DNA of 64,000 bases from Selaginella moellendorffii (Eukaryota; Plantae; Lycopodiophyta): positions 4,896,389 through 4,960,388 of the forward strand of contig NW_003314262.1 of NCBI RefSeq assembly GCF_000143415.4, written 5' to 3'. A program made the translations under genes and the position numbers. The notes beneath the pieces are model-generated. The model saw only the letters and a list, made by a program, of their open reading frames with translations, was not told the DNA's origin and ran no database searches. This document shows positions 32,524-45,205 of the stretch, piece by piece (within the stretch, counting starts at the first letter, position 1; each line of letters begins with the position of its first letter).

Positions 32524-34766
32524 TTAGAAGTCGATCTCGTCAATGCCCAGCATTCTTGGGCCCGGGATGGTTTTTCCAATGGCTTTGCCGCAGAGAAGAA
32601 CGTTTTGCGGGATCCATGTCTCGGTTCTCGTGGAGTTCTCAGGATTAAACACGCGGGCATAGCCTTCCTGGCCCAGGTACTGGCGTCTCAAGCACTGGGA
32701 CCGGATGTTCCACATTCCTACGTTGTCTACCGAGAAGAGAATCGCCGTCCAGCCTCTCGGGTACACCTACAAGTTGATCAAAGTTGATAGTCAGCGAACA
32801 AAATTTCGTTTCTTTTAGTGTTTTTGGGTGATCGACCAACCTGTGTTGTGGAGCGTGAAACAGCGTCGACCAAGTTGTACTTGGATCGGCTGCTGGGCGA
32901 CCATGTTTCGTTGAATCCAAACCTGGAAGAGCAACCACAATGGATAAGTGATCCGATCCAATCGAGCCCGATCCATACCCGACCACCCAGAAGCTCATCC
33001 CGTCCAAATGCCACGACTGGATCTCGTTCTCCGGGTTGACGAATACGAGCTCCACAAAGCTCTTGTAATCCAGCTCGAGAACCGACGTCTCCATCACCGG
33101 CGAGCCCACGGCACTGGTTCGCATCGATCCCCGCGTGAAAACTCCGTCGATATTGTAGAAATCCGCGAGCTTGAGCGGGGTATCGGGTGTGAGATACGAC
33201 TGCCCGTTGATCGCGAAGCGCGCCTGGTTGTTTAGAGTCACGGAGGAGCTCGAGAGCTGGATCACTCTCGTGATGGGAATTTGGCCATAGTGGTAAGATC
33301 CTTGTGGGTTGGGCCGCGCGGCACCGGTGGTCAAATTCCACCTTAAAGAAGAAAAAGTGTCAGTGAGCTCGGGCAGGTTCTCGGTCATACCGCGCGGCAC
33401 TGCTCGGTCTGGCAAGACTGTACTGCGCGGTACTACTTACTTGATAGATAACGCCTGGTTTAGCGAAAAGTTGACGTCCAAGGGATCCGGGCCGGCCGGG
33501 ATGGTTCCAGATGCCGCAGTGTTGGAATTTTGGTAGTGAAGAATCGCGACGCCGTTGAGTGAGCCGGAGCTGAATTTGGTGCTTGCGACAATGTAGTAGT
33601 CCGCGGGGCTCTGATCCATAGTGACGAGCACCGAGTAGGATTGCCCGAGATGGATGTCGAGCGAATCGAAGCACGTCTTGGCGGTGTAGGAGCCCTCGGT
33701 TTCCACCACGCAGAGCTTGTGGGACTGGATCCGGACGTTGAGTGATTGGGCGGTTCCAACGTTTGAGATACGGAAGCGGTAGATCTTCCCTGCGAGATTG
33801 GAAATGCCCGAGTTGATCGATCGAGAAGTTTTTCGCAGGATCGAGTGGGAGTGATGCTTACCAGATTCGACAGTGAACTTCTCAAAGTTGGCATTGCTAC
33901 CACCCGCAATGTATGGTGCCTTGCCATTCATAAGAACAACGTTTGGTCTTCCAATGCCTTGGCTCTTATCCAGTCGTGATCGGCTCGACTGTTTAATCAC
34001 ACAAAGATTTGTCCACCAATCTTGATGTGAGATCGTTGCAACAAGAAAAAGAAAGAAAAAAAGAACGCACGCGTTCTTCCACTGACCCGATAGTCTCGAA
34101 GCTGCCAATCACCGGCCAAAAGCGTGAAATCGTCCGCGGGCGGTAGGAAAGGAACGGCAATCACTACGCGATTGGCGATCTGGATTCCACCATAGCCTCC
34201 CGCGGCCTTGTGGAAATTGATGGAAGGGTAGTAGAAGAAGGTCCCGATTTGATCCTTGACTTGGAAATTATACTGCCACGACTGGCCGGGCAAGATCGGG
34301 CAATTCGTTCCCGAGACGCCGTCTTGCCAGGATGATCGCCGCTGCTGGATCCCATTCCTGGATCATGGATCACGAGATTGGAAATGGATTAACGGAAACA
34401 AAACCGAAGTGATCATACCAGTGAAAGAGCAGGGGCTCGTCGAGGCGATTCGTCACGTTGATGTGGAGATTGTTGTTCGTGGTGGTCTTGATCGTGGGTC
34501 CTGGAAATTGGTTGTTGATCGCGATCACCTGGGAAGAACAATGTGAGATTTGAGACCCCAAAGAAACAGAGCATAGCAAATAGTGCGTGGTGTATGCGTG
34601 TGATGATTGATTGATTGATCGATCTTACTCTTTGTGTGGTGCCCAGCAGTGGCAAATTCTGAAATGTGACTACCCAGTCGAGGAACTGATCTGGATCCGC
34701 TGCCTGTGCCGTCGATGCTAGTGCAATAACTGCGAGAATCGCGAGGAATTTGGCGATGGCGGCCAT
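32524..34766 (-). CDS. SKU5-similar (SKS) multicopper-oxidase-like protein, without an evident GPI tail
   Basis: Signal peptide, INNQFPGP, WQDGVSGTNCPI, VKDQIGTFFY, WNLTTGAARPNPQGSYHYG and DNVGMWNIRS. Confidence 0.92.
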
Positions 34767-35516
34767 GTTTGTCGTCGTGAGGAACAGAGCACTCTGTTTG
34801 AAGAAGTGGCGGATCAAATTGTAGAATTCGAGAGCCTTTCCTATCAGAGCTGTTGAATTTCGCGGCCAAAGATCAAAGGCGATGGTGACCGTGGAGTTCC
34901 TCTGGCGATTTATAGCTGAATTTGCTGAGAGAAGGGGAATTTCAAAGAAGATGAAGCTTCAAAGCAAGATCGTGCGACTCAAGTTCCGCAATGAGCTGCG
35001 TCCAGCGCACATGAACTGATGGAGCGCCCAAAACAAAGTCGACGATTCAAGCCGAAGATTCTTGGCAGTAAAAACCGGAGTTGATGATAAAAAACACCTC
35101 ACAACTAGCACCAAAATTCATGAAAATTCCGCGCTTAGCCGCAAAGCCAGTTGATCGATCAAGTTACCGATCGACCTAGCTTGCAATTCCGGTGCGAGCG
35201 CGTGAGGTTTACTTGCAGCTCCGCGCCCGCTGCTTTGCACAGCAATTCCACGCGTCCTCTAGAACACACGCAGCGGGCGTGCGTGGGGGCTAGCGGCCGT
35301 TGGATGCACTTATCCGCCGGCCACGAATACATAGCGTGGCGATATCGGCACTGTTGGATGTTAACGCGTTGGACGGACAGTAGGCAAAAGAATAAATAGC
35401 CATGGCCACTGTTGCGATTGTGTCTATATGTTGTTTCTTTCTCAAGATGTTGCGTAAAGTAACGTGCATTGGATGAATGGATTAAAAGAGTCATATATAC
35501 GTGTGCCCTAAGTTTG

Positions 35517-35789: not shown

Positions 35790-38700
35790 ATGGCGAGGCC
35801 AATCTGGTGGAAGGGCGATGAGGCAGTCACTCTGGATCAATCGCCCTCCCAGCGATCGTCCTATTATGGCGAAGAGGACGAGAACTACGATTTTAGCTTC
35901 CAGAGTAGCTTTCAGGCATCGCCCATGGCTAGAACGATCCACGCGACCTCTTCGCCAATGGGCAATGGCGGCTTCAGTCCCTCGCAGCTGGGCAATGGTC
36001 CGGATCGCGTGTTCGTGGTCCCTGTCCGGGGATCCGAGACGCCAATCACCAGGTCCAAGATTCCTCCTCCTCCGCGCGGCCGGATGGGCAGCACCACGCC
36101 TGAAATCGAGCGCCGGCTTGCCAATGCCGAGGCCGGCACCGTCCAGGGCGCTGCGCTGGAGATGTATCGGGTGCTCAAGAAGAATGGATTGGCCGCCCAG
36201 GCGGAGAAGGCGATCAAGCGGCTCAACAGTGGCATTAGCGGCGCGGCGGCGGAGGAATCCCTGCTGGGGATGGAATTCATCCTCAAGGATGGGATCGTGA
36301 GCTTCCTCAGGGAGCTCTCCAAGCTCGCGCCTCCAGTTCCTCAGCAGGTAAATCAATCGCTCGCGAAAATATTTTTAGGGTTCTTCATTTTCTCGTTGTC
36401 TACAGGTAGTGAGGTTTTCTGGCGTGCGCCTCAGCGTCTCGCAAGAACAGGCGCTGGGGTATGAGACATTCGGCGGCAAGCTGCTGGGATGCTTCTTGGG
36501 GCCGCTGCGGAATCTACTGCTGGACAGGAAGACGATCAAGAGGAAGATCGAGGTGCTAAAGGATCTGGATGGATTTATCATGCCCGGCAGCACTACGCTG
36601 CTCTTGGGGCCTCCCGGGAGTGGGAAAAGCTCGTTGCTCAAGGTATTTCTTCAGCCGCATTCATGTGTTTGCTTGGGTAGAATGTTCTTCTTTGGCGTTT
36701 TTTTCCTGGAATCCTTGATGGCCGTATTCTCATGATCTTGTTTCCTTCTTCGTTCAAGTTCTTAGATTGTTCCACCGCAAGGTTCTTCATTTGTCGTCTG
36801 GGATCTTTCTCTTTTAGTTTTTGTTTTTTGGTAATCAGCTTTCGACTTTTTTCAGGTGCTCGCCGGGCGATGTGAATCCAACAAAACCACTAAACTACAA
36901 GGAATAGTTTCTTACAATGACCGACTAGCTTCCGAGGTCGTGCTTACTCGACTCATTGCTTATGTCAATGGACAAGTGAACAGGTATTAAAAGCTTGTAA
37001 ATCTCCAGGTGCTAACATTGAGCGTTTCTTCAAGGCATTTGCCGTTTCTAACAGTTCGCGAGACGCTAGAGTTTGCTGGGGATTGCACGCAAGGGATCCG
37101 ACCAAAAAACTTCACTCCCAGCATGCGGAGGTACTTTGCTCAAGCTCTAGTGCAAGGGCAGGACCCATACCTGGAGTATGTTCTTCATGTTCTGGGGCTC
37201 AAGGCCGTGGAAGATAAGCTCGTTGGAATCGGCCAAGACGGTCTAAGTGAAACAAACAGGCACAGACTTACAAGTGCTGAGCTAGCAATCGGGACTTACG
37301 CAGTAATGATCTATGACCAGCCTTGCTACGAGCAGGACTCGCAGGCAACGTATGACCTCGTCTTCACCTTGCGTGCGATAAGCCGCATACAACGGTCTTC
37401 TGCGGTGATGTCGCTGGTTCAAGTATCTCCAGAAGTTTTCGAGCTTTTTGACCGGGTGATAGTCTTGGGAGATGGACAGATACTTTACCAGGGACCACGA
37501 CAAGACGTCTTGGATTACTTCTCTGTGCTGGGGTATGTTCTATAGCTTGGCTTTCGAGTTTATCTTAACATGGGATTTTTTTCTCGCTATGCAGATTTTC
37601 GAAACCGTCTCATGTTGACACAGCTGCATTCTTGCAAGACATTGGAGCAGGTGAAGGCGGTCAATACGTAAAAGGAAACCGGCAACTATATGGGATTGAA
37701 GAGCTCGTCGAGGCTTACAAATCCTCAGACTTGTACAAAGACATCGTCCGGATAGTGTCCAGTGACGATGTTGCGTTTACGTACTGGGTGGAGCATGAGC
37801 CTAGCATTGGTTTGTCAGTGCGTAAATCCTCAAACGGTGCAGGTAAAGTGTTTGGAAGTGTTTTATTTGTGTTTTAACCAGCCTTGTACATTCATTGCAG
37901 AGGTGGTAGTAAGTAGACTATCCACTAAAGTCGACCAAGCTCAAGGAATTGAGAGTACTGGGCATATCCAAGAAGGTGACATTGTCACTGGAATTTCTCT
38001 AAGGAACGGAAGGATGCAGTATATTGCAGTAGGATCGAAGATAACCCGGAAGAGCTATGCTGATGATATATCCAAGGTTTTGGAAGGGGCTAGAGGACAC
38101 GTCCGACTCCAAGTAGAGCGAAGAGCAACAGAGCAGGAAGTCGAGAGCTCACAACCAGCGTTTGTGCAAACCTGGTGGGAGTCGACAAAAACAGTCACCA
38201 AGCGTCAGCTACGATTTGCAACTCGTCTCAAGATACTTGTTATCTTGCGTCTCACTCAAGTTCGTATCGACTGTTCCTTTCTTCATTCATGCGTGATAAG
38301 TTTTACAGGTTGTGATCTTGGGCATTTTCGGGGGAGCTATATTCTATAACTTCGGTGGATCTCTTGATCCGGGAGAGATGAACATTGTTCGAGCGATCGG
38401 CTTTGTTTCTACTTTCAGTATTATGCTTGTCAACGTTGTTCAACTTCCGGTGCACATGATTCAGCGGCCGGTTTTTTACAAGCACAGAGCGCAGCGTTTT
38501 TTCAGAGTTTCCTCGTATTTAGCAGCTCAGAGCATCGTCAACCTTCCACAGTCTATTATGGAGGCAAGGCGCCCATTGCATTTTACTTGTGGATTCTGAC
38601 CTGGGATTTGTTGTGGCAGGCCCTTCTGTACAGCATTCCAGTGTATTTTCTTGCAAGACTTTCACTGGAAGAAGCTGGACTTCATTACATTCAGTTCTTT

Positions 38701-41280
38701 TGGCTATTAGCGTTAGTGGCATACATGGGGTCTTTTCTTGTCATTTTTCTGAGTACAATTACTCCAGTTCTCGAAGCTGGGAACGCTTTAGCAGGTTTGT
38801 TTTACATTTTTCTTATATTTGGTCTAACTCAGGATCGTGTGTCAGGCTTGGTGGTTTCTCTCGGTTTATTGTTTTCCGGATTCGTTATCTTTCCGAGCTT
38901 GACTCCACGCTACTGGAAGTGGATGCTTTCGGCCAATCCGCTCCGTTGGGGAAATGTTATATTCTGCATGGCCGAGTTCCTCAATCGCTACCATGAATCT
39001 TGCCAAGACTTTCAGCAACTTCTGTTTTGCCGGAAACATCCAGATCTACCAGTTGGCCGGGCGTACCTCGAGTTTTTCCAGCTTGATTCGGAGAGAAAAT
39101 GGATGGCAATATCCTTCGCAATTATTGCTGCTTCGGTTCTCATTCTGGCGCTCGCTTCTTACTTGGGACTCAGCAAAGTCGTCTTTTCGGAAGTAAGTCC
39201 TTCCTTGCCAAGCGAGCCTGCAAGGAGTTCTTACAAGCAATCGGAGGACAAGCAGAAAGATATCTCTTGGGACGGACTATCCAGAATAACCGAGATGAGC
39301 AACTTGGAAACCAAGACATTGTGGGAGAAGAATGGTAGCACCTATGACGACGAAGAGCTTGGCCTTGGGCTTGAACTGCGGGGAACAGGTCACCAGTGGG
39401 AGAATTCGCACATACCCGTGAAAGCAGCCACGTTATCATTCCACCAAGTGAGTTTCTCTGTAAAAGCCGAGGAGAAGATAGTGCTGGACAGGGTCTCGGG
39501 ATTCGCAAAGCCAGGGACAATGCTTGCAATTATAGGGAGCATGGGCTCAGGGAAGTCCACTCTTTTAAGAGTTCTCGCAGGACGAACTCTGCCATCGTCA
39601 AGTGGGGAACTTATCTCGGGTGAAGTGCTGGTGAACGGATTCAAGCTGAGTAGCAACACCTTCCGGCGGCTGTCTGGTTTCGTGGAGCGAGTGGACGCTC
39701 ATCAGCCATTCTTGACAGTGAAGGAGTCACTCGATTTCAGTGCCGGTCTTCGTTTTGGAGGCAGCACAACCCCCGGCCGCCGGGCCTTTCACGTAGAGCT
39801 CGTCCTGGAACTTATGGGCCTCGTCGGCGTCAAAGACCAGCTAGTGGGATCTCTCAAGTTTTCAAACGGGAAGATCTTTGAGCTCGCCAAGAAGCTGACC
39901 ATCGCTGTGGAGGAGCCGTGAGTCGGCATGATTTTTCTCGAGGACCCGACGTCCGATCTCGACAGCGTCGCCACCAGGAACATCCTGTTCGCCATCCAAA
40001 CGGTTGCAGCATCCGGCCGCACTGTTATCAGCACGATCCAGCAGCCGAGCGCTAGAGTTCTCAGTGCCTTTAACAACGTTCTTATTATGAGACCCGGTGG
40101 GGAGCAAGTTTACTTTGGTCCCGTCGGCTGGAACTGTGCCCAGCTTCTGGAATACTTCACGACGATGTCGAGCGCTCCAAAGTATGAGCAGAGCCAGAAC
40201 CCGGTGACTTACATGTTCGATATCATCCGAAAGGACGAGCAAAACCTCGGCCTTGTCTATCGAGCAAGTTCTCTGGGAAGCTCCAACGCCGAAGAACTCA
40301 AGAAACTCCGGAAGCAGTACCGGAAGAACTCGTTGCGGCCGGCGCTGGATTCGACTTACGCCGCTCCTTACTCCAAGCAGGCCTGGTTGGTCTTCCTGAG
40401 AACACAGAGGTTCCTCTACCGCAACGTCCAGTACACGTTTGGACGGCTCTCCGGGTCGATCGCTCTCGGCCTTTTGCTCGGCTCGGTCTACTACAAGATC
40501 GCCACCAACGATACGTTCTCGGTCACGTCCCGGTCGCTTTTCATCTACATCCAGGTGATGCTACTGGGTGTGATCATCGCCAACAACGTCGTCCCCCAGC
40601 TTGGAACGGACAGGTTGGTCTACCACAGGGAACAGCGAGCAGCGATGTACGCTCCAATCTTCTATCCGGTGTCTTGGGCGATCGCGGAGATCCCATACCT
40701 GTTCATCGCGACGCTGGTGTTCGTGGGGATCTCAAACGGGCTGGCAGCGATCGCGACGCAGAGCGTGAGCAGCTTCGTCACGTACTGGCTGTGCCTCTTC
40801 GTCTTCACCACCACCGTGATGTACTTCGGTATGTTCATCACCATCGCCACCCCGGTTCCAGTGCTGGCGGCGTTCGTGGTGTCCATCACGAACTCCATCT
40901 GGGTCTCGGCCTCCGGCGTGATCGTCCCAAAGGCCAAGATGGGATTTTGCGAGTGGGTCTTCTGGGCGAATCCATTCCAGTACGTGACGCACGCGCTGAC
41001 GAGCGTGAGCTTCTTCTGCGACACCGCGAGCGCGGCGTGCGCGAGCTGCCGGGTGGGCGATGCGAATTCGTGCGCGGGATGCCACTGCCCGCGGCTGCTC
41101 AACGCCGAGAGCTCCGATCCGGGGAGCTTGCCGGTGTTCGTGTGGGATCGATTGAGCTCGCAGCGATCGCTGGAGGTGGAGAGGGTCTCGCTGGATTTCG
41201 TCGCTCTGGGCGGGATGAGCGTCCTCTTCGCGCTGCTTTCTTTCCTCGCCTTCGTGTGGATGAAGCACAACAGAGGATGA
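35790..41280 (+). CDS. Atypical full-size ABCG (PDR-type) transporter, NBD1-[PDZ-like]-TMD1-NBD2-TMD2, with an in-frame TGA at 39919
   Basis: Walker A motifs GPPGSGKSS and GSMGSGKST; [43 protein letters not shown]; two multi-helix TMDs. Exons join in frame through short introns (e.g. 36348-36405, 36643-36855, 37843-37900, 38564-38619). Confidence 0.88.
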
Positions 41281-42329
41281 AGAAGAAGCGCAAAATCAAC
41301 GGTCCAGATGAGCTCTCATTTTTTAATTCAACGGCCTCGATGAAACGGGCAAACGTGCCCACCGTTGTGGCATATTCACCGAATCTCCAACAGGGTTAGG
41401 GTTTATGGCAAGCGGCATTGTTTTGTGCGTGATCAACCGGTCGTCCAGGGCGGATCGTGTGCGCGGCGCCGCCGAGTAGCAGCTAGATCGCGCACTCTCA
41501 CAGCAGCGCCGAATCTTTCTTCCTTTTTTCTATTCCCTCTGATCAATCGCCGCCGCGGCGCTTATCTTGCTAATAATCTCGCTTTGCGCGCCGCGGATTC
41601 CACATCAAGATCGCGTGCGGTGCCGCTGTCCAGCCAATTCATCCAGCACTTCTCTCCCTTTTGTCCGGGCTCTCTTGGTTCGATCGATCATCCAGTTCCA
41701 GGTAGATTCCTTGCGCGAGGGCTTCCAATGCTAGCGCCGGCCATTCGCTAGGTACGATAGAGAGAAGAAATCGCGGGCACACAAGGGGGGGCCGGGTGAT
41801 GATGGGAGTTATCATAAAATTTGCAAAGCGGGTGTTCTACAGTGGAACAACGTGAATGGTATGGTCTGGCAAGTGGCAGTGATAGGATTTCTTCCAGAAT
41901 GGGGCTCGGGGGGTCTATGGCACCGCCAGGAGCTACGAGTAGCTCGAATTTTTTGTGACAGCGTGTGGGAACTACCTATGTAGCTATAGATTTCTCGCTA
42001 CTGGCAGCCGAGAAGTAGCAGTAGCAGCACAGTGGTACAGACAGGCACAGGGAAAGGATGGTCCGTGTGAGCAGCAGCGATGGATGATTCACTCCCCGAC
42101 AAGCACGCCATTCTTAATTGCTGATGCTGCTGCTACAGCTCCGGTGAGCATTTCGTAAGCACTCCATCAGAGACCCTCGTGGATGAAAGAAATGGGATGG
42201 GGCTTTCGCCAGGAAAGTTCCGGTTTTGATGACGATGGCAGCGAGAAGTTTGTCATGGGGTCTCCGTGGTCGCGCGAGGTTTCCTAGAGTAGCTTCGAGG
42301 TAGCATAGAGGGCTTTGGTGCCTGGGAAG

Positions 42330-45205
42330 ATGCCCTTCCCATGGAGCAAATCTTCGAAGAAATCGTCGTCCAATTCTTCCGGTAAGGATAAGGCTGACAA
42401 CAGCAAGCTTTACTCTCTCGGGAAGAAGGGTCCGCGGTTGTCAGGCGAGGATGACGGGTCTTCGAGGGGCTCCAGGAGTAGTTACGATTCTTCGGCCAGG
42501 GTGGTAGCGGCGGATGCTCCTACATTCTCGCCTTCGTCTGCCGGAATTCGAAGCCCGCTCTTTCCCGAGCCGCAGGCATTCAAGGGACAGCCTCTTCCTT
42601 TGCCGGAAAGTACTACCAAGATTCAGCTTTGCAATGGAACTCTTCCGCTGCCGACGTATGACCAAGTCGAGTTTAAGCACGAGGTTGCCGAATTGGACGG
42701 GACGACTTCGGGATATGGTTCTGGTTCTATCTCCAGTGGAAGCTCCACAAGCAGTGGGGAAGCAGCGGACGCTTGGCTTGGAAGTTCCAATCGCCAGCAA
42801 ACCGATCAAAATGGACACGCAAACTCCTTGTAAGCTTTTACTTTATGTTTTTAACTTTCGCGAGAAGTGCTTGCTCACCTGGTTTCTTTCTTTTTTCTTT
42901 CAGCTCACTTCAGAAAAACCAAAACAGAGCTGGAAGAAATCCACACCAGAAAGAGGCGGTTCCGAAGACGGTACCTCCAGGAAATAAGACGAGCTCCGTC
43001 TCCCCATTGCGAGCTCGTGCTGCGGCGGCAAAACAAGGCATGCATTTACATCTACCGGCACGTAGCGCACCAACCAGCCTCATCTCCAGTCCTTCTCACA
43101 GTCCAAGACGTTTAAGTTCGTCGGAGCAACAGGCTTTGTTCCAGAACTACAGTGCTGTGACGAACTCCACAAACCAGGGACGAAACAGTCCAGAAAAATC
43201 TCCTCTTGCAAGTCCGATACGAGGCGGTTCGAGGATTCAAAGTGGTGCTGTCTCTCCCCTGCACCATTCAAGTTCCAGAGGTACAGACTCGCCTAGTGTC
43301 GGGCATCGGCTCCCTCCGCCACCGGCATTTACAAACTCGACAGTAAATTCTCCAGCGTCATCTACATTTCCTCTCGGTTCACCGCCTGGCATGCCTTCGC
43401 ACAGTCCGATCAGGTGGCAAAAAGGAAACCTCCTTGGTGTTGGCTCTTTTGGACGAGTGTACAAAGGCTTTAGGTATGCTTCTGATATTCTCGGCCTACT
43501 CCACGAGCTGATGGTTTGTTTTTCTTTGTTTGCAGTGATAGTGGTACCTTTTGTGCAATGAAAGAAGTCCTAGTTGTGGATGATCCTAAGTCTATAGAAT
43601 CTGTAAAACAGCTAATGCAGGTATGCTGCCGTTCTCATTGCACGTTCCTGTCACTGACTGGTGTTTCAGGAAATAAATATGCTAAGTAGTTTAAGACATC
43701 CTAACATTGTTCAATACCTTGGCTCAGAAATGGTAAGGTTAAGGTATCTCTTAACTAGATGTCTCATTTCTCCTTTCTTGCTGCCTGCAGCTGGACGATA
43801 GTTTGTATATTTATTTGGAGTTCGTTTCCGGAGGCTCGATACACAAGGTGCTCCAGGAATATGGTGCTTTCAAAGAGCCCGTCATTCGTAGCTATACGCA
43901 GCAAATCCTATCTGGACTCCAATACTTGCACAGTATGAACAAAGTTCACCGGTTCGTTGACTCTGTACTCTTGCGGGCTTCTATTAACAGCGCCTTTATT
44001 ACAGAGACATCAAAGGTGCGAACATTCTCGTTGACACTAATGGTGAAGTCAAGCTAGCGGATTTTGGAATGGCCAAGCATGTAAGTAGCAAGCTGTGGTT
44101 TTTGTTGTTTACTTATCCATCCACGCTTCAGATATCTTCTAGTTCACTTGTGCTATCTTTTAAAGGAAGTCCCTACTGGATGGCTCCTGAGGTATGTCCA
44201 CGTTTTCTTTCTTCTAATACTTCTATGACACCGTCACACGGCTACTCCTTTTTAGGTTTTCAAGAGTAATGCGCAAAGCTATCCAGTGGATATCTGGAGT
44301 CTAGGATGTACAATCATTGAAATGGCAACTGGAAAACCACCATGGAGCCAGTACGAGGGGGTATGTATTTTTTTGTAGTTTCTGTGCGTGCTCACTTACT
44401 TGTACACAGATTGCAGCCATGTTCAAGATTGGAAACAGTAAGGAGACTCCTACAATACCGGACACCTTATCGCCAGTGGCGAAGGAGTTTATCAGGTTGT
44501 GCTTACAGCGAAATCCCGACGATCGTCCAACAGCTTCTCAACTATTAGAGCACCCCTTTGTCAAGTTTTTGCACGATGAACATCTTCCGGATGGCCTTCC
44601 ACCTCTGTCGCCAACATTTCGCTCAGTGGTACGTGATATTCTTTGTTTTCCATTCTTTTGTTTCTTTTGGATGATGTTGAGTGATCAACCTGCATGATCA
44701 TCCAGGTTGCGAATTTAAGCCACGATAGAGGGGGACAGTATCATCCGCGGTAATGTTTTTTAAGCACAAAAACGATACGCTGACGATTGTTTCTCGCTTT
44801 TGCTTTTGTAGAGATCTCATGTCTCCTGTTAGCAGCAATTCGGCCTACACGAGATCAATCTATTCCAGCTATGGAGGTCTCACACCAATTATCACATCTG
44901 GAACTTCCACACCCCAAACCGAGGAAGCTCCAGCCGGGTTTGCGAAGGACAGATATACCATGGCTTCAAGAGTGAACGGAATGCACATAAGAAACGAGCC
45001 AAGATTTACGGCGACTGCTGTTTCGTCACCAGGGACTAGAAGTCCAAGGGCTGCTCAAAGGAGCGAGTTCGTGTGGAATCCACCGGTACAGCTCACTCCG
45101 GATGCCAGTCCAAGGCGTATGTCCAGCGATATCTTGAGTACAAACTCTAGATTCTATGCAAATTCTCTTCTCGGTAAGCAAGCTCTTCCTTTTTCCTTGC
45201 TTTGA
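42330..45205 (+). CDS. MEKK-type MAP kinase kinase kinase, YODA/MAPKKK-alpha-like, multi-exon
   Basis: Ser/Pro-rich N-terminus with GQPLPLP and [12 protein letters not shown]. Kinase motifs [45 protein letters not shown] and [13 protein letters not shown]. Confidence 0.93.

What the first reader, a model, noticed from the sequence alone, without database searches (positions are those of the whole stretch)
37779..38121. PDZ-like domain integrated inside a full-size ABCG/PDR transporter
Seen: after removing a 58-nt intron (37843-37900), the NBD1-TMD1 linker reads [94 protein letters not shown], flanked on both sides by normal PDR linker sequence. Established: this follows the PDZ consensus in order - a GLGF-type loop (SIGLSV), beta-C (VVVSRL), G-x-I-x-x-GD-x-V/I (GHIQEGDIV), an alpha-B helix (ISKVLEGA) and a final strand (VRLQVER). 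Canonical plant PDRs have no folded domain here, and plant PDZ domains are mostly found in Deg/CTP proteases and a few other proteins. Inference: a cytosolic peptide-binding module built into the transporter, suggesting a regulated or scaffolding ABCG subclass that I do not recognise as described.
Basis: partly seen in the sequence, partly recalled or inferred. Interest (0 to 1): 0.88.

Follow-up and report, generated by a model that had tools for sequence, protein, structure and literature searches.

The report
PDZ-like domain inside plant ABCG transporter
A Selaginella membrane-transporter gene carries an expressed, roughly 95-residue insert predicted to fold like a PDZ docking module, and the same insert marks an old, essentially unstudied land-plant branch of ABCG proteins that was not found in Arabidopsis.

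Summary
After removal of the 58-nt intron (37843-37900), the NBD1-TMD1 linker of a full-size ABCG gene (35790-41280, +; Selaginella moellendorffii, near-identical to SELMODRAFT_406260) reads exactly as reported. Spliced transcript contigs from four studies keep the insert.

The insert is absent from canonical PDRs. It is present in a monophyletic clade running from a liverwort through ferns, a gymnosperm, Amborella, magnoliids, grasses and many eudicots. It is as conserved (0.74) as the NBDs and TMDs (0.71-0.79).

Sequence methods do not place it in PDZ. Pfam PDZ models score only below threshold, though they recur in 17 matches among 40 inserts. An AlphaFold2 model of moderate confidence (pLDDT 65) matches only PDZ domains: all of the top 50 in Foldseek, and all of the top 50 in an exhaustive VIA-align search (Z 8.7-7.1). 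So a PDZ-like fold is likely (about 0.8), but a ligand is not shown.

Both ABC signature motifs are degenerate across the family, which favours a regulatory role. The clade is probably the "V1-type" of Cho et al. 2020. I found no paper that describes the domain.

The scan already found the same feature on two other pieces of this genome (s1-358632, s1-332867).

The window copy has an in-frame TGA in NBD2 that no transcript contig shows.

The parts
35790..41280 (+). Full-size ABCG gene with nine exons: 35790-36347, 36406-36642, 36856-36983, 37035-37532, 37595-37842, 37901-38259, 38309-38563, 38620-38794, 38846-41280. It encodes 1630 codons. Domain order is N-extension, NBD1, PDZ-like insert, TMD1, NBD2, TMD2.
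   Evidence: Assembled. Seven of the eight introns appear as joints in spliced transcript contigs; the first intron, 36348-36405, lies before the stretch that was laid. Pfam finds ABC_tran and ABC2_membrane. The protein is near-identical to SELMODRAFT_406260.
36607..37532 (+). NBD1, from Walker A (GPPGSGKSS, 36607-36633) to the end of exon 4. The ABC signature is degenerate ([10 protein letters not shown]) and Walker B reads YDQP.
   Evidence: Matches NBDs of Cdr1, Pdr5 and ABCG25 in the PDB.
37776..38121 (+). PDZ-like insert, residues 535-630, interrupted by the intron. Elements: beta1 37776-37793; GLGF-like loop PSIGLS 37800-37817; beta3 across the intron 37842-37920; GD plus beta4 37972-38001; long helix 38038-38088; last strand 38101-38121.
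   Evidence: AlphaFold2 model, pLDDT 64.7. PDZ-only structural matches. Sub-threshold Pfam PDZ matches recur. Coordinates.
37843..37900 (+). The 58-nt GT..AG phase-1 intron that splits the insert between beta2 and beta3.
   Evidence: Spliced out in four runs. Exon-level ORF fragments from other plants begin just before E[LIV]VV, which suggests the intron position is conserved.
38161..39171 (+). Connecting (elbow) helix [10 protein letters not shown] followed by TMD1. Contains introns 38260-38308, 38564-38619 (GC..AG) and 38795-38845.
   Evidence: Pfam ABC2_membrane; joints; coordinates.
39919..39921 (+). In-frame TGA in NBD2 (window reads IAVEEP*VGM). All transcript contigs read ELAANPSM here, which takes six substitutions plus 3 inserted nt within 39912-39925.
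   Evidence: stop at codon 1178; tables 3 and 4; SELMODRAFT_406260 reads ELAANPSM.

Best explanation
The segment is a genuine, expressed domain of about 95 residues with a PDZ-like fold. It sits in the cytosolic linker between NBD1 and the connecting helix of TMD1 of a divergent full-size ABCG protein. It defines an old land-plant clade, from liverwort to angiosperms, that is separate from canonical PDRs and is inherited mostly vertically. The most likely role (inference) is a regulatory or docking module. It would bind either a partner protein or a segment of the transporter itself, next to the membrane and NBD1, and couple that binding to the NBD-TMD interface. This fits a protein whose two ATP sites both lack a canonical signature motif, so it probably binds ATP but hydrolyses it poorly. 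Shown here: the insert exists, is spliced into mRNA, is conserved as strongly as the core domains, is absent from PDRs, and is predicted to be PDZ-shaped. Inferred: that it binds anything, what it binds, and that the protein is regulatory rather than a pump.
For: Sequence and splicing.
Clade-wide presence: Adiantum, Cryptomeria, Amborella, Magnolia, Dioscorea and many eudicots; Calypogeia, grasses and divergent Selaginella and Adiantum paralogues.
Absence from canonical PDRs.
Monophyly against PDRs, SH-aLRT 100, with a branching order that follows the species tree.
Mean column conservation of the insert is 0.74, against 0.79 for NBD1, 0.72 for TMD1, 0.71 for NBD2 and 0.73 for TMD2.
Fold: AlphaFold2 pLDDT 64.7, pTM 0.60. 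The Foldseek PDB top 50 are all PDZ, probability 0.98-1.00, best E 1.2e-3. The VIA second look gives best Z 9.0, rmsd 2.7 A over 85 residues (Par-3b PDZ2), with 90 chains at Z>=8. VIA against 48,161 representative chains, without Foldseek, gives a top 50 that is all PDZ, Z 8.7-7.1, including the plant LSF1 PDZ (8j5d_D, Z 8.1). The Atlas shape search is headed by Streptophyta 'PDZ domain-containing protein' clusters, TM 0.62-0.63.
Sequence hints: three Pfam PDZ models are the only recurrent families among the 40 inserts (8, 7 and 2 members, best E 0.0031). The Magnolia insert matches PDZ profile positions 12-80 of 81 colinearly, and the divergent Selaginella paralogue also hits PDZ, E 0.0081. 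Language-model neighbours include PDZ clusters at 0.77-0.81, which is a lead only.
Degenerate ATP-site motifs across the family.
Against: No PDZ HMM reaches its curated cut-off. The window's own insert scores E 0.21 (PDZ_2) in one call and gets no hit in another.
A 40-sequence profile finds no PDZ among 177,635 PDB sequences at E<=10.
The model is of moderate confidence only. Its least confident stretch (residues 37-47 of the model) is also the most conserved one (K-x-G-x-x-GIESTG).
Foldseek E-values stay just above 0.001, and the tool notes that Z around 8 is middling.
The predicted alpha-B helix, which lines the peptide groove in PDZ domains, is the least conserved element.
The loop is preceded by conserved E-x-E-P rather than a basic residue. 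The comparison with canonical PDZs rests on my memory and was not tested.
The family's C-termini (LKHN plus a variable tail) do not look like a classical hydrophobic PDZ ligand.
Confidence: 0.72

Rival explanations
1. The domain is a canonical PDZ that binds the C-terminal tails of other proteins, so the transporter acts as a scaffold. It would place in cis what NHERF- or PDZK1-type adaptors do in trans for animal ABC transporters.
For: PDZ-only structural matches cover the whole domain. An x-Phi-G-Phi loop ([SG][IL]GL) and beta2 are 70-90% conserved.
Against: Conserved acidic residues lie where canonical PDZs carry the carboxylate-coordinating basic residue (recalled, not tested). The Gly of the loop is replaced in Amborella, Coptis, Bertholletia, Euphorbia and Parasponia. 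The alpha-B helix is poorly conserved. No ligand is known.
Confidence: 0.3
2. The domain has a PDZ-shaped fold but acts only within the molecule. It would pack against NBD1, the connecting helix or membrane lipids, or bind the conserved N-terminal motif (V-V-P-x-R-G-S/T-E-T-P-x-T-R), and so stabilise or gate an asymmetric, poorly hydrolysing ABCG.
For: The strongest conservation is in beta3, the alpha-A region and beta4 (KxGxxGIESTGxVQxGDVVT), not in the peptide groove. The domain sits directly before the connecting helix. Both signature motifs are degenerate family-wide. An N-terminal motif is conserved from liverwort to monocots.
Against: No full-length model or contact prediction could be run. 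The N-terminal motif decays in several eudicots that keep the domain.
Confidence: 0.4
3. The segment is not a PDZ. It would be a different small beta-rich fold or a partly disordered conserved linker, and the PDZ resemblance would be an artefact of a mediocre model.
For: pLDDT is 64.7 and no residue reaches 90. There is no significant sequence match to PDZ. The first, shallower model gave mixed top hits that included NUDT5 and TolB.
Against: With the deeper alignment, all top-50 matches in two independent structural searches are PDZ and cover residues 1-107. PDZ was already the single best hit of the poorer model. Sub-threshold Pfam matches fall on three PDZ models and on no other recurrent family.
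Confidence: 0.18
4. The segment is an annotation artefact or dead sequence, such as a retained intron, or an exon that is skipped, inside a pseudogene.
For: The window copy has an in-frame TGA at 39919-39921.
Against: Spliced contigs of four studies contain the insert exons and carry no stop at that place. The insert is conserved across land plants at the level of the core domains.
Confidence: 0.03

Closest known systems
Plant and fungal full-size ABCG (PDR) transporters, such as Arabidopsis ABCG29-43, yeast Pdr5 and Candida Cdr1
   Same: The domain order is the same: NBD1-TMD1-NBD2-TMD2, with ABC_tran and ABC2_membrane domains. The best PDB sequence matches are Cdr1 and Pdr5, at E 4e-39 and 2e-37 over the NBDs.
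   Different: This is a separate clade on a long stem branch. It has a PDZ-like insert of about 95-140 residues in the NBD1-TMD1 linker that PDRs lack. Both ABC signatures are degenerate, whereas both are canonical in the plant PDR-type proteins aligned here. NBD1 Walker B reads DQ. It also has its own N-terminal extension.
'V1-type' early-diverged full-size ABCGs of Cho et al. 2020 (PMC8359288)
   Same: That paper describes a full-size ABCG type outside the main plant PDR radiation. It reports the type in Selaginella and Amborella, among other lineages. This fits the clade found here.
   Different: Identity with V1 is not verified, because the paper's supplementary tables were not available. 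The paper reports the type in no angiosperm other than Amborella, whereas members occur in magnoliids, monocots and many eudicots. It does not mention the insert.
Canonical PDZ domains (Pfam PF00595, PF17820, PF13180), such as those of Par-3, ZO-1, Scribble and plant LSF1
   Same: The predicted fold and the order of elements agree (beta1, loop, beta2, beta3, alpha-A region, GD-beta4, beta5, alpha-B, beta6). Z is 8-9, rmsd is 2.6-3.2 A, and 80-89 residues align.
   Different: Sequence similarity is below every curated threshold. Structure-based identity is 10-21%. The residues before the loop are acidic. The domain is embedded inside an ABC transporter rather than in a soluble scaffold or a protease.
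PDZ adaptors that regulate animal ABC transporters in trans (NHERF1 with CFTR, PDZK1 with MRP2). This comparison rests on my own knowledge and was not tested here.
   Same: A PDZ module is coupled to an ABC protein at the cytosolic face of the membrane.
   Different: In those systems the PDZ is a separate protein that binds the transporter's C-terminal tail. Here the PDZ-like module is part of the transporter chain, and no ligand is known.

Membership tests
ABCG full-size (PDR-type) transporter | Reverse topology, NBD before TMD, duplicated, with ABC_tran and ABC2_membrane domains | tested here: met
   Pfam ABC_tran (E 2.7e-27, 2 stretches) and ABC2_membrane (E 1.4e-37, 3 stretches) on the near-identical SELMODRAFT_406260. 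The window's exons give the same result.
ABCG full-size (PDR-type) transporter | At least one catalytically competent ATP site (Walker A and B with catalytic Glu, plus a canonical signature from the other NBD) | tested here: not met
   Both signatures are degenerate family-wide ([10 protein letters not shown] and [14 protein letters not shown], against GISGGQKKRV and GLSTEQRKRL in the aligned PDRs). NBD1 Walker B reads DQ. NBD2 Walker B reads ED in Selaginella and EE in angiosperms, but DE in liverwort, fern and gymnosperm. This is motif-level evidence only; no activity was measured.
Canonical plant PDR clade (Arabidopsis ABCG29-43 type) | Groups with PDRs in a tree and has the short PDR linker without an extra domain | tested here: not met
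   The clade separates with SH-aLRT 100 on a stem of 1.32 substitutions per site. It carries extra linker residues that PDRs lack.
PDZ domain | Sequence match to a PDZ profile above the curated threshold | tested here: not met
   The best match is 17 bits against a cut-off of 23.2. The window's insert scores PDZ_2 E 0.21 or gets no hit. The profile search of the PDB finds no PDZ.
PDZ domain | Partly open beta-barrel of five or six strands with a short and a long helix, elements in canonical order | tested here: met
   The AlphaFold2 model (pLDDT 64.7) has five strands (a two-residue bridge where beta5 would lie) and the long helix in PDZ order. All top-50 matches are PDZ in Foldseek and in the exhaustive VIA search, Z up to 8.7-9.0 over 79-89 residues. 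The short alpha-A helix is not modelled, because that region has low confidence.
PDZ domain | Carboxylate-binding loop (basic residue, then x-Phi-G-Phi) and a conserved alpha-B/beta2 groove | tested here: inconclusive
   The [SG][IL]GL loop and beta2 are 70-90% conserved, but the loop Gly is replaced in five species. The preceding residues are E-x-E-P, and alpha-B is only 30-70% conserved.
PDZ domain | Binds a peptide ligand (C-terminal or internal) | not testable with these tools
   This needs binding assays or a complex structure.
V1-type full-size ABCG (Cho et al. 2020) | Same sequences as in that paper's V1 group | not tested
   The supplementary tables are not held. Only the taxon list in the text could be compared.

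The most novel reading that the evidence does not exclude
This clade is not a pump. It would be an ATP-binding but essentially non-hydrolysing ABCG that works as a membrane-anchored regulator or receptor, the plant counterpart of regulatory ABC proteins such as SUR or CFTR. Its built-in PDZ-like module would recruit or sense a partner protein or lipid. It would have been kept since the first land plants and lost repeatedly in model lineages such as Brassicaceae.
Probability: 0.25. Interest if true: 0.8.

Novelty: new variant of a known kind. Interest (0 to 1): 0.6.

Why it matters
ABCG/PDR transporters are central to plant defence, cuticle formation and hormone transport, yet almost all knowledge comes from Arabidopsis-type PDRs. 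This work defines a separate branch that has been conserved across land plants, from a liverwort to flowering plants. It has two unusual properties: a PDZ-shaped domain built into the NBD-TMD linker, and degenerate signature motifs in both ATP sites. The branch occurs in crops and trees (grasses, Vitis, Camellia, Coffea, Hevea, Eucalyptus) but not in Arabidopsis, which explains why it has not been studied. It offers a concrete, testable case of how an accessory domain can regulate an ABC protein in cis. It also gives a clear marker (the insert) for annotating the clade, which databases now name 'ABCG36/37/43-like' purely by similarity.

Tried and rejected
1. Pfam on exon 6 alone and on the window's whole insert gave no significant family.
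2. hmmsearch of insert profiles A2 and A3 against all PDB sequences found no PDZ, only a chance match to a Borrelia Vlp protein.
3. The first AlphaFold2 run, with 11 sequences (pLDDT 60), gave a weak and mixed Foldseek list. I replaced it with a 40-sequence run.
4. The exhaustive phmmer with exon 6 found only clade members, exon-level fragments and repeat-protein noise (P0004, P0011-13). It found no donor PDZ family.
5. The listing of cluster members on the short fragments showed that they come from unnamed metagenome or Logan contigs, which says nothing about taxonomy.
6. The look-up of encoding contigs for SELMODRAFT_406260 found nothing on record, so the TGA site could not be compared at DNA level with the older assembly.
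7. The supplement of Cho et al. 2020 is not held, so V1 identity is unverified.
8. The pseudogene and retained-intron readings are rejected by the spliced contigs.
9. The idea that the transporter's own C-terminus is the PDZ ligand is disfavoured, because the tails are variable and not hydrophobic.
10. I did not run a profile-profile comparison (hhalign) with PDZ, because no PDZ alignment could be obtained from the tools and I did not type sequences from memory.
Full report
OBSERVATION

The window carries a nine-exon gene on the + strand (35790-41280). I assembled it from ORFs and splice sites. The exon that ends at 37842 and the exon that starts at 37901 are separated by a 58-nt GT..AG intron.

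I laid public run contigs on 36400-41300. Four runs from four studies each hold spliced contigs with every intron in that stretch removed:
- 36643-36855
- 36984-37034
- 37533-37594
- 37843-37900
- 38260-38308
- 38564-38619 (GC..AG)
- 38795-38845

The two exons that encode the insert are retained, with no other letters. The gene occurs once in the window.

IDENTITY OF THE GENE

An exhaustive phmmer search with exon 6 found a 1600-aa protein that is 100% identical over the insert. It is SELMODRAFT_406260 of Selaginella moellendorffii.
- It differs from the window's product by about 19 substitutions.
- It also lacks 31 residues, because the deposited model avoided the GC..AG intron.

Pfam sees ABC_tran twice and ABC2_membrane. 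The closest solved proteins are Cdr1, Pdr5, ABCG25, ABCG5/8 and ABCG2. They match the NBD up to just before the insert. The protein is therefore a full-size ABCG.

HOW WIDESPREAD THE INSERT IS

Searches restricted to the insert region or to the N-terminal half returned full-length proteins with the same insert from many lineages:
- the fern Adiantum
- the gymnosperm Cryptomeria
- Amborella
- magnoliids (Magnolia, Asimina, Tasmannia)
- monocots (Dioscorea and several grasses, including Oryza brachyantha)
- many eudicots (Vitis, Camellia, Actinidia, Eucalyptus, Hevea, Linum, Coffea, Parasponia, Corchorus and others)
- the liverwort Calypogeia
- divergent paralogues in Selaginella and Adiantum

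Scores drop sharply from clade members (above 380 bits) to ordinary PDRs (about 230 bits). No clade member from Brassicaceae, legumes or Solanaceae appeared above that gap. This is suggestive of absence rather than proof, because that search is word-limited.

A maximum-likelihood tree places all 20 insert-bearing proteins on one side of a long branch (SH-aLRT 100). Inside the clade the order follows the species tree. The insert columns were left in that alignment, but they are about 100 of 1668.

Canonical PDR-type proteins of Arabidopsis, Diphasiastrum, Cryptomeria and Trebouxia have a gap where the insert lies.

Across 29 full-length members, mean column conservation is as follows:

| Region | Conservation |
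|---|---|
| Insert | 0.74 |
| NBD1 | 0.79 |
| TMD1 | 0.72 |
| NBD2 | 0.71 |
| TMD2 | 0.73 |

The insert is therefore under the same constraint as the core domains.

Exon-level ORF fragments from other plants start in unrelated sequence and become homologous just before E[LIV]VV. This suggests that the intron position is old. It also coincides with the only length-variable loop.

IS IT A PDZ?

By sequence, no.
- The window's insert gives PDZ_2 at E 0.21 in one call and no hit in another.
- Profiles of 11 or 40 inserts find no PDZ chain in the PDB.

There are still sequence hints.
- Among the 40 inserts scanned one by one, the only recurrent families are three PDZ models (8, 7 and 2 members, best E 0.0031). 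Every other family occurs once.
- The Magnolia insert aligns colinearly with positions 12-80 of the 81-position PDZ profile.
- The very divergent Selaginella paralogue also hits PDZ, at E 0.0081.

By predicted structure, yes.
- With 40 sequences, AlphaFold2 gives pLDDT 64.7 and pTM 0.60. The model has five strands and a long helix in PDZ order, with a two-residue bridge where beta5 would lie.
- The Foldseek top 50 in the PDB are all PDZ domains, with probability 0.98-1.00 and best E 1.2e-3.
- The VIA-align second look gives Z 9.0, rmsd 2.7 A over 85 residues, with 90 chains at Z>=8.
- A VIA search of 48,161 representative chains, which does not depend on Foldseek, again returns only PDZ domains in the top 50 (Z 8.7-7.1). 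These include the PDZ of the plant protein LSF1.
- The ESM Atlas shape search is headed by Streptophyta "PDZ domain-containing protein" clusters.
- Language-model neighbours include PDZ clusters at weak scores.

The cautions are these. The model is only moderately confident. The tool itself calls Z around 8 middling. The most conserved stretch (K-x-G-x-x-GIESTG) is the least confident part of the model.

I put a PDZ-like fold at about 0.8. Membership of the PDZ sequence family is not demonstrated.

HOW IT MAY WORK

The domain lies between NBD1 and the connecting helix ([10 protein letters not shown]) with no membrane span between them. It is therefore on the NBD side of the membrane, next to the bilayer.

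Family-wide motif analysis shows:
- Walker A of NBD1 is intact.
- Both ABC signatures are degenerate.
- NBD1 Walker B reads DQ.
- In angiosperms, the NBD2 Walker A and Walker B are also altered.

Neither composite ATP site looks canonical. This was also noted by another first-stage note on this window (s1-419428), and I confirmed it here.

Within the insert, conservation varies by element:
- The x-Phi-G-Phi loop and beta2 are well conserved.
- The predicted alpha-B helix is the least conserved element.
- The beta3 / alpha-A / beta4 stretch is the most conserved.

The residues before the loop are acidic. The family's C-terminal tails are variable and not hydrophobic.

From these points I infer that the domain is a docking or regulatory module rather than a classical C-terminal-tail binder. 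An intramolecular or membrane-proximal role (about 0.4) is slightly favoured over classical scaffolding (about 0.3). None of this is shown.

COMPARISON WITH WHAT IS KNOWN

Cho et al. 2020 (PMC8359288) describe an early-diverged "V1-type" of full-size ABCGs in charophytes, mosses, Selaginella and Amborella, and report it in no other angiosperm.
- The clade here is probably that type, but I could not verify this because the supplement is not held.
- If it is the same type, its range among angiosperms is much wider than that paper reported.
- That paper does not mention the domain.

Full-text searches for PDZ with full-size ABCG, with ABCG and Selaginella, or with PDR found nothing relevant.

The scan has already flagged the same feature on two other pieces of this genome. 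Its follow-up agents reached the same reading (s1-358632 and s1-332867). These are not independent evidence.

SIDE OBSERVATIONS

The window has an in-frame TGA at 39919-39921, inside a 14-nt stretch that differs from all transcript contigs by six substitutions and 3 missing nt.
- The contigs and SELMODRAFT_406260 read ELAANPSM there.
- Everywhere else on the exons the contigs match the window, apart from one base (40036) and a few run-specific single-base differences.
- This is therefore a local assembly error or a private lesion, not evidence that the gene is dead.

VERDICT

The feature is a new variant of a known kind, namely an ABCG clade with a built-in accessory domain. It is real, ancient and expressed. 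To my knowledge it is undescribed apart from a phylogenetic mention of the clade. Interest: 0.6.

Noticed in passing
window 39912-39925 (TGA at 39919-39921): This 14-nt patch in NBD2 creates an in-frame stop (IAVEEP*VGM). All spliced contigs of four studies, and SELMODRAFT_406260, read ELAANPSM instead, which takes six substitutions plus 3 nt. Elsewhere on the exons the contigs match the window, apart from position 40036 (different in all four runs) and a few run-specific single-base differences. This is probably a local assembly or polishing error, or a private allele.
   Followed up: partly
window 38564-38619: This is a GC..AG intron of 56 nt, confirmed by transcript contigs. The deposited model SELMODRAFT_406260 skips 31 residues here ([11 protein letters not shown]...QSIME, part of TMD1), apparently because the non-canonical donor was avoided.
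   Followed up: yes
window 36595-40050 (gene-wide): Both ABC signature motifs are degenerate and NBD1 Walker B reads DQ. This holds not only in Selaginella but across the whole clade. Angiosperm members have also altered the NBD2 Walker A (GGSKxSK) and Walker B (EE).
   Followed up: yes
window 35990-36070 (residues about 70-95): A conserved N-terminal motif, V-V-P-x-R-G-S/T-E-T-P-x-T-R-A/S-K, is shared from liverwort to monocots and decays in several eudicots. It may be a phosphorylation site or an internal ligand.
   Followed up: partly
window 33437-34870 (-) and 42315-45200 (+): The neighbouring genes look like an SKU5-like multicopper oxidase (upstream, minus strand) and a MAPKKK-type protein kinase (downstream, plus strand). 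I judged this from ORF translations only.
   Followed up: no
P0060 (Selaginella paralogue, XP_002969152.1) and P0063 (Adiantum paralogue): These divergent paralogues keep a recognisable but much-changed insert (27-31% identity). In P0060 the GLGF-like loop is replaced by SDIEIS. They branch at the base of the clade on long branches.
   Followed up: partly
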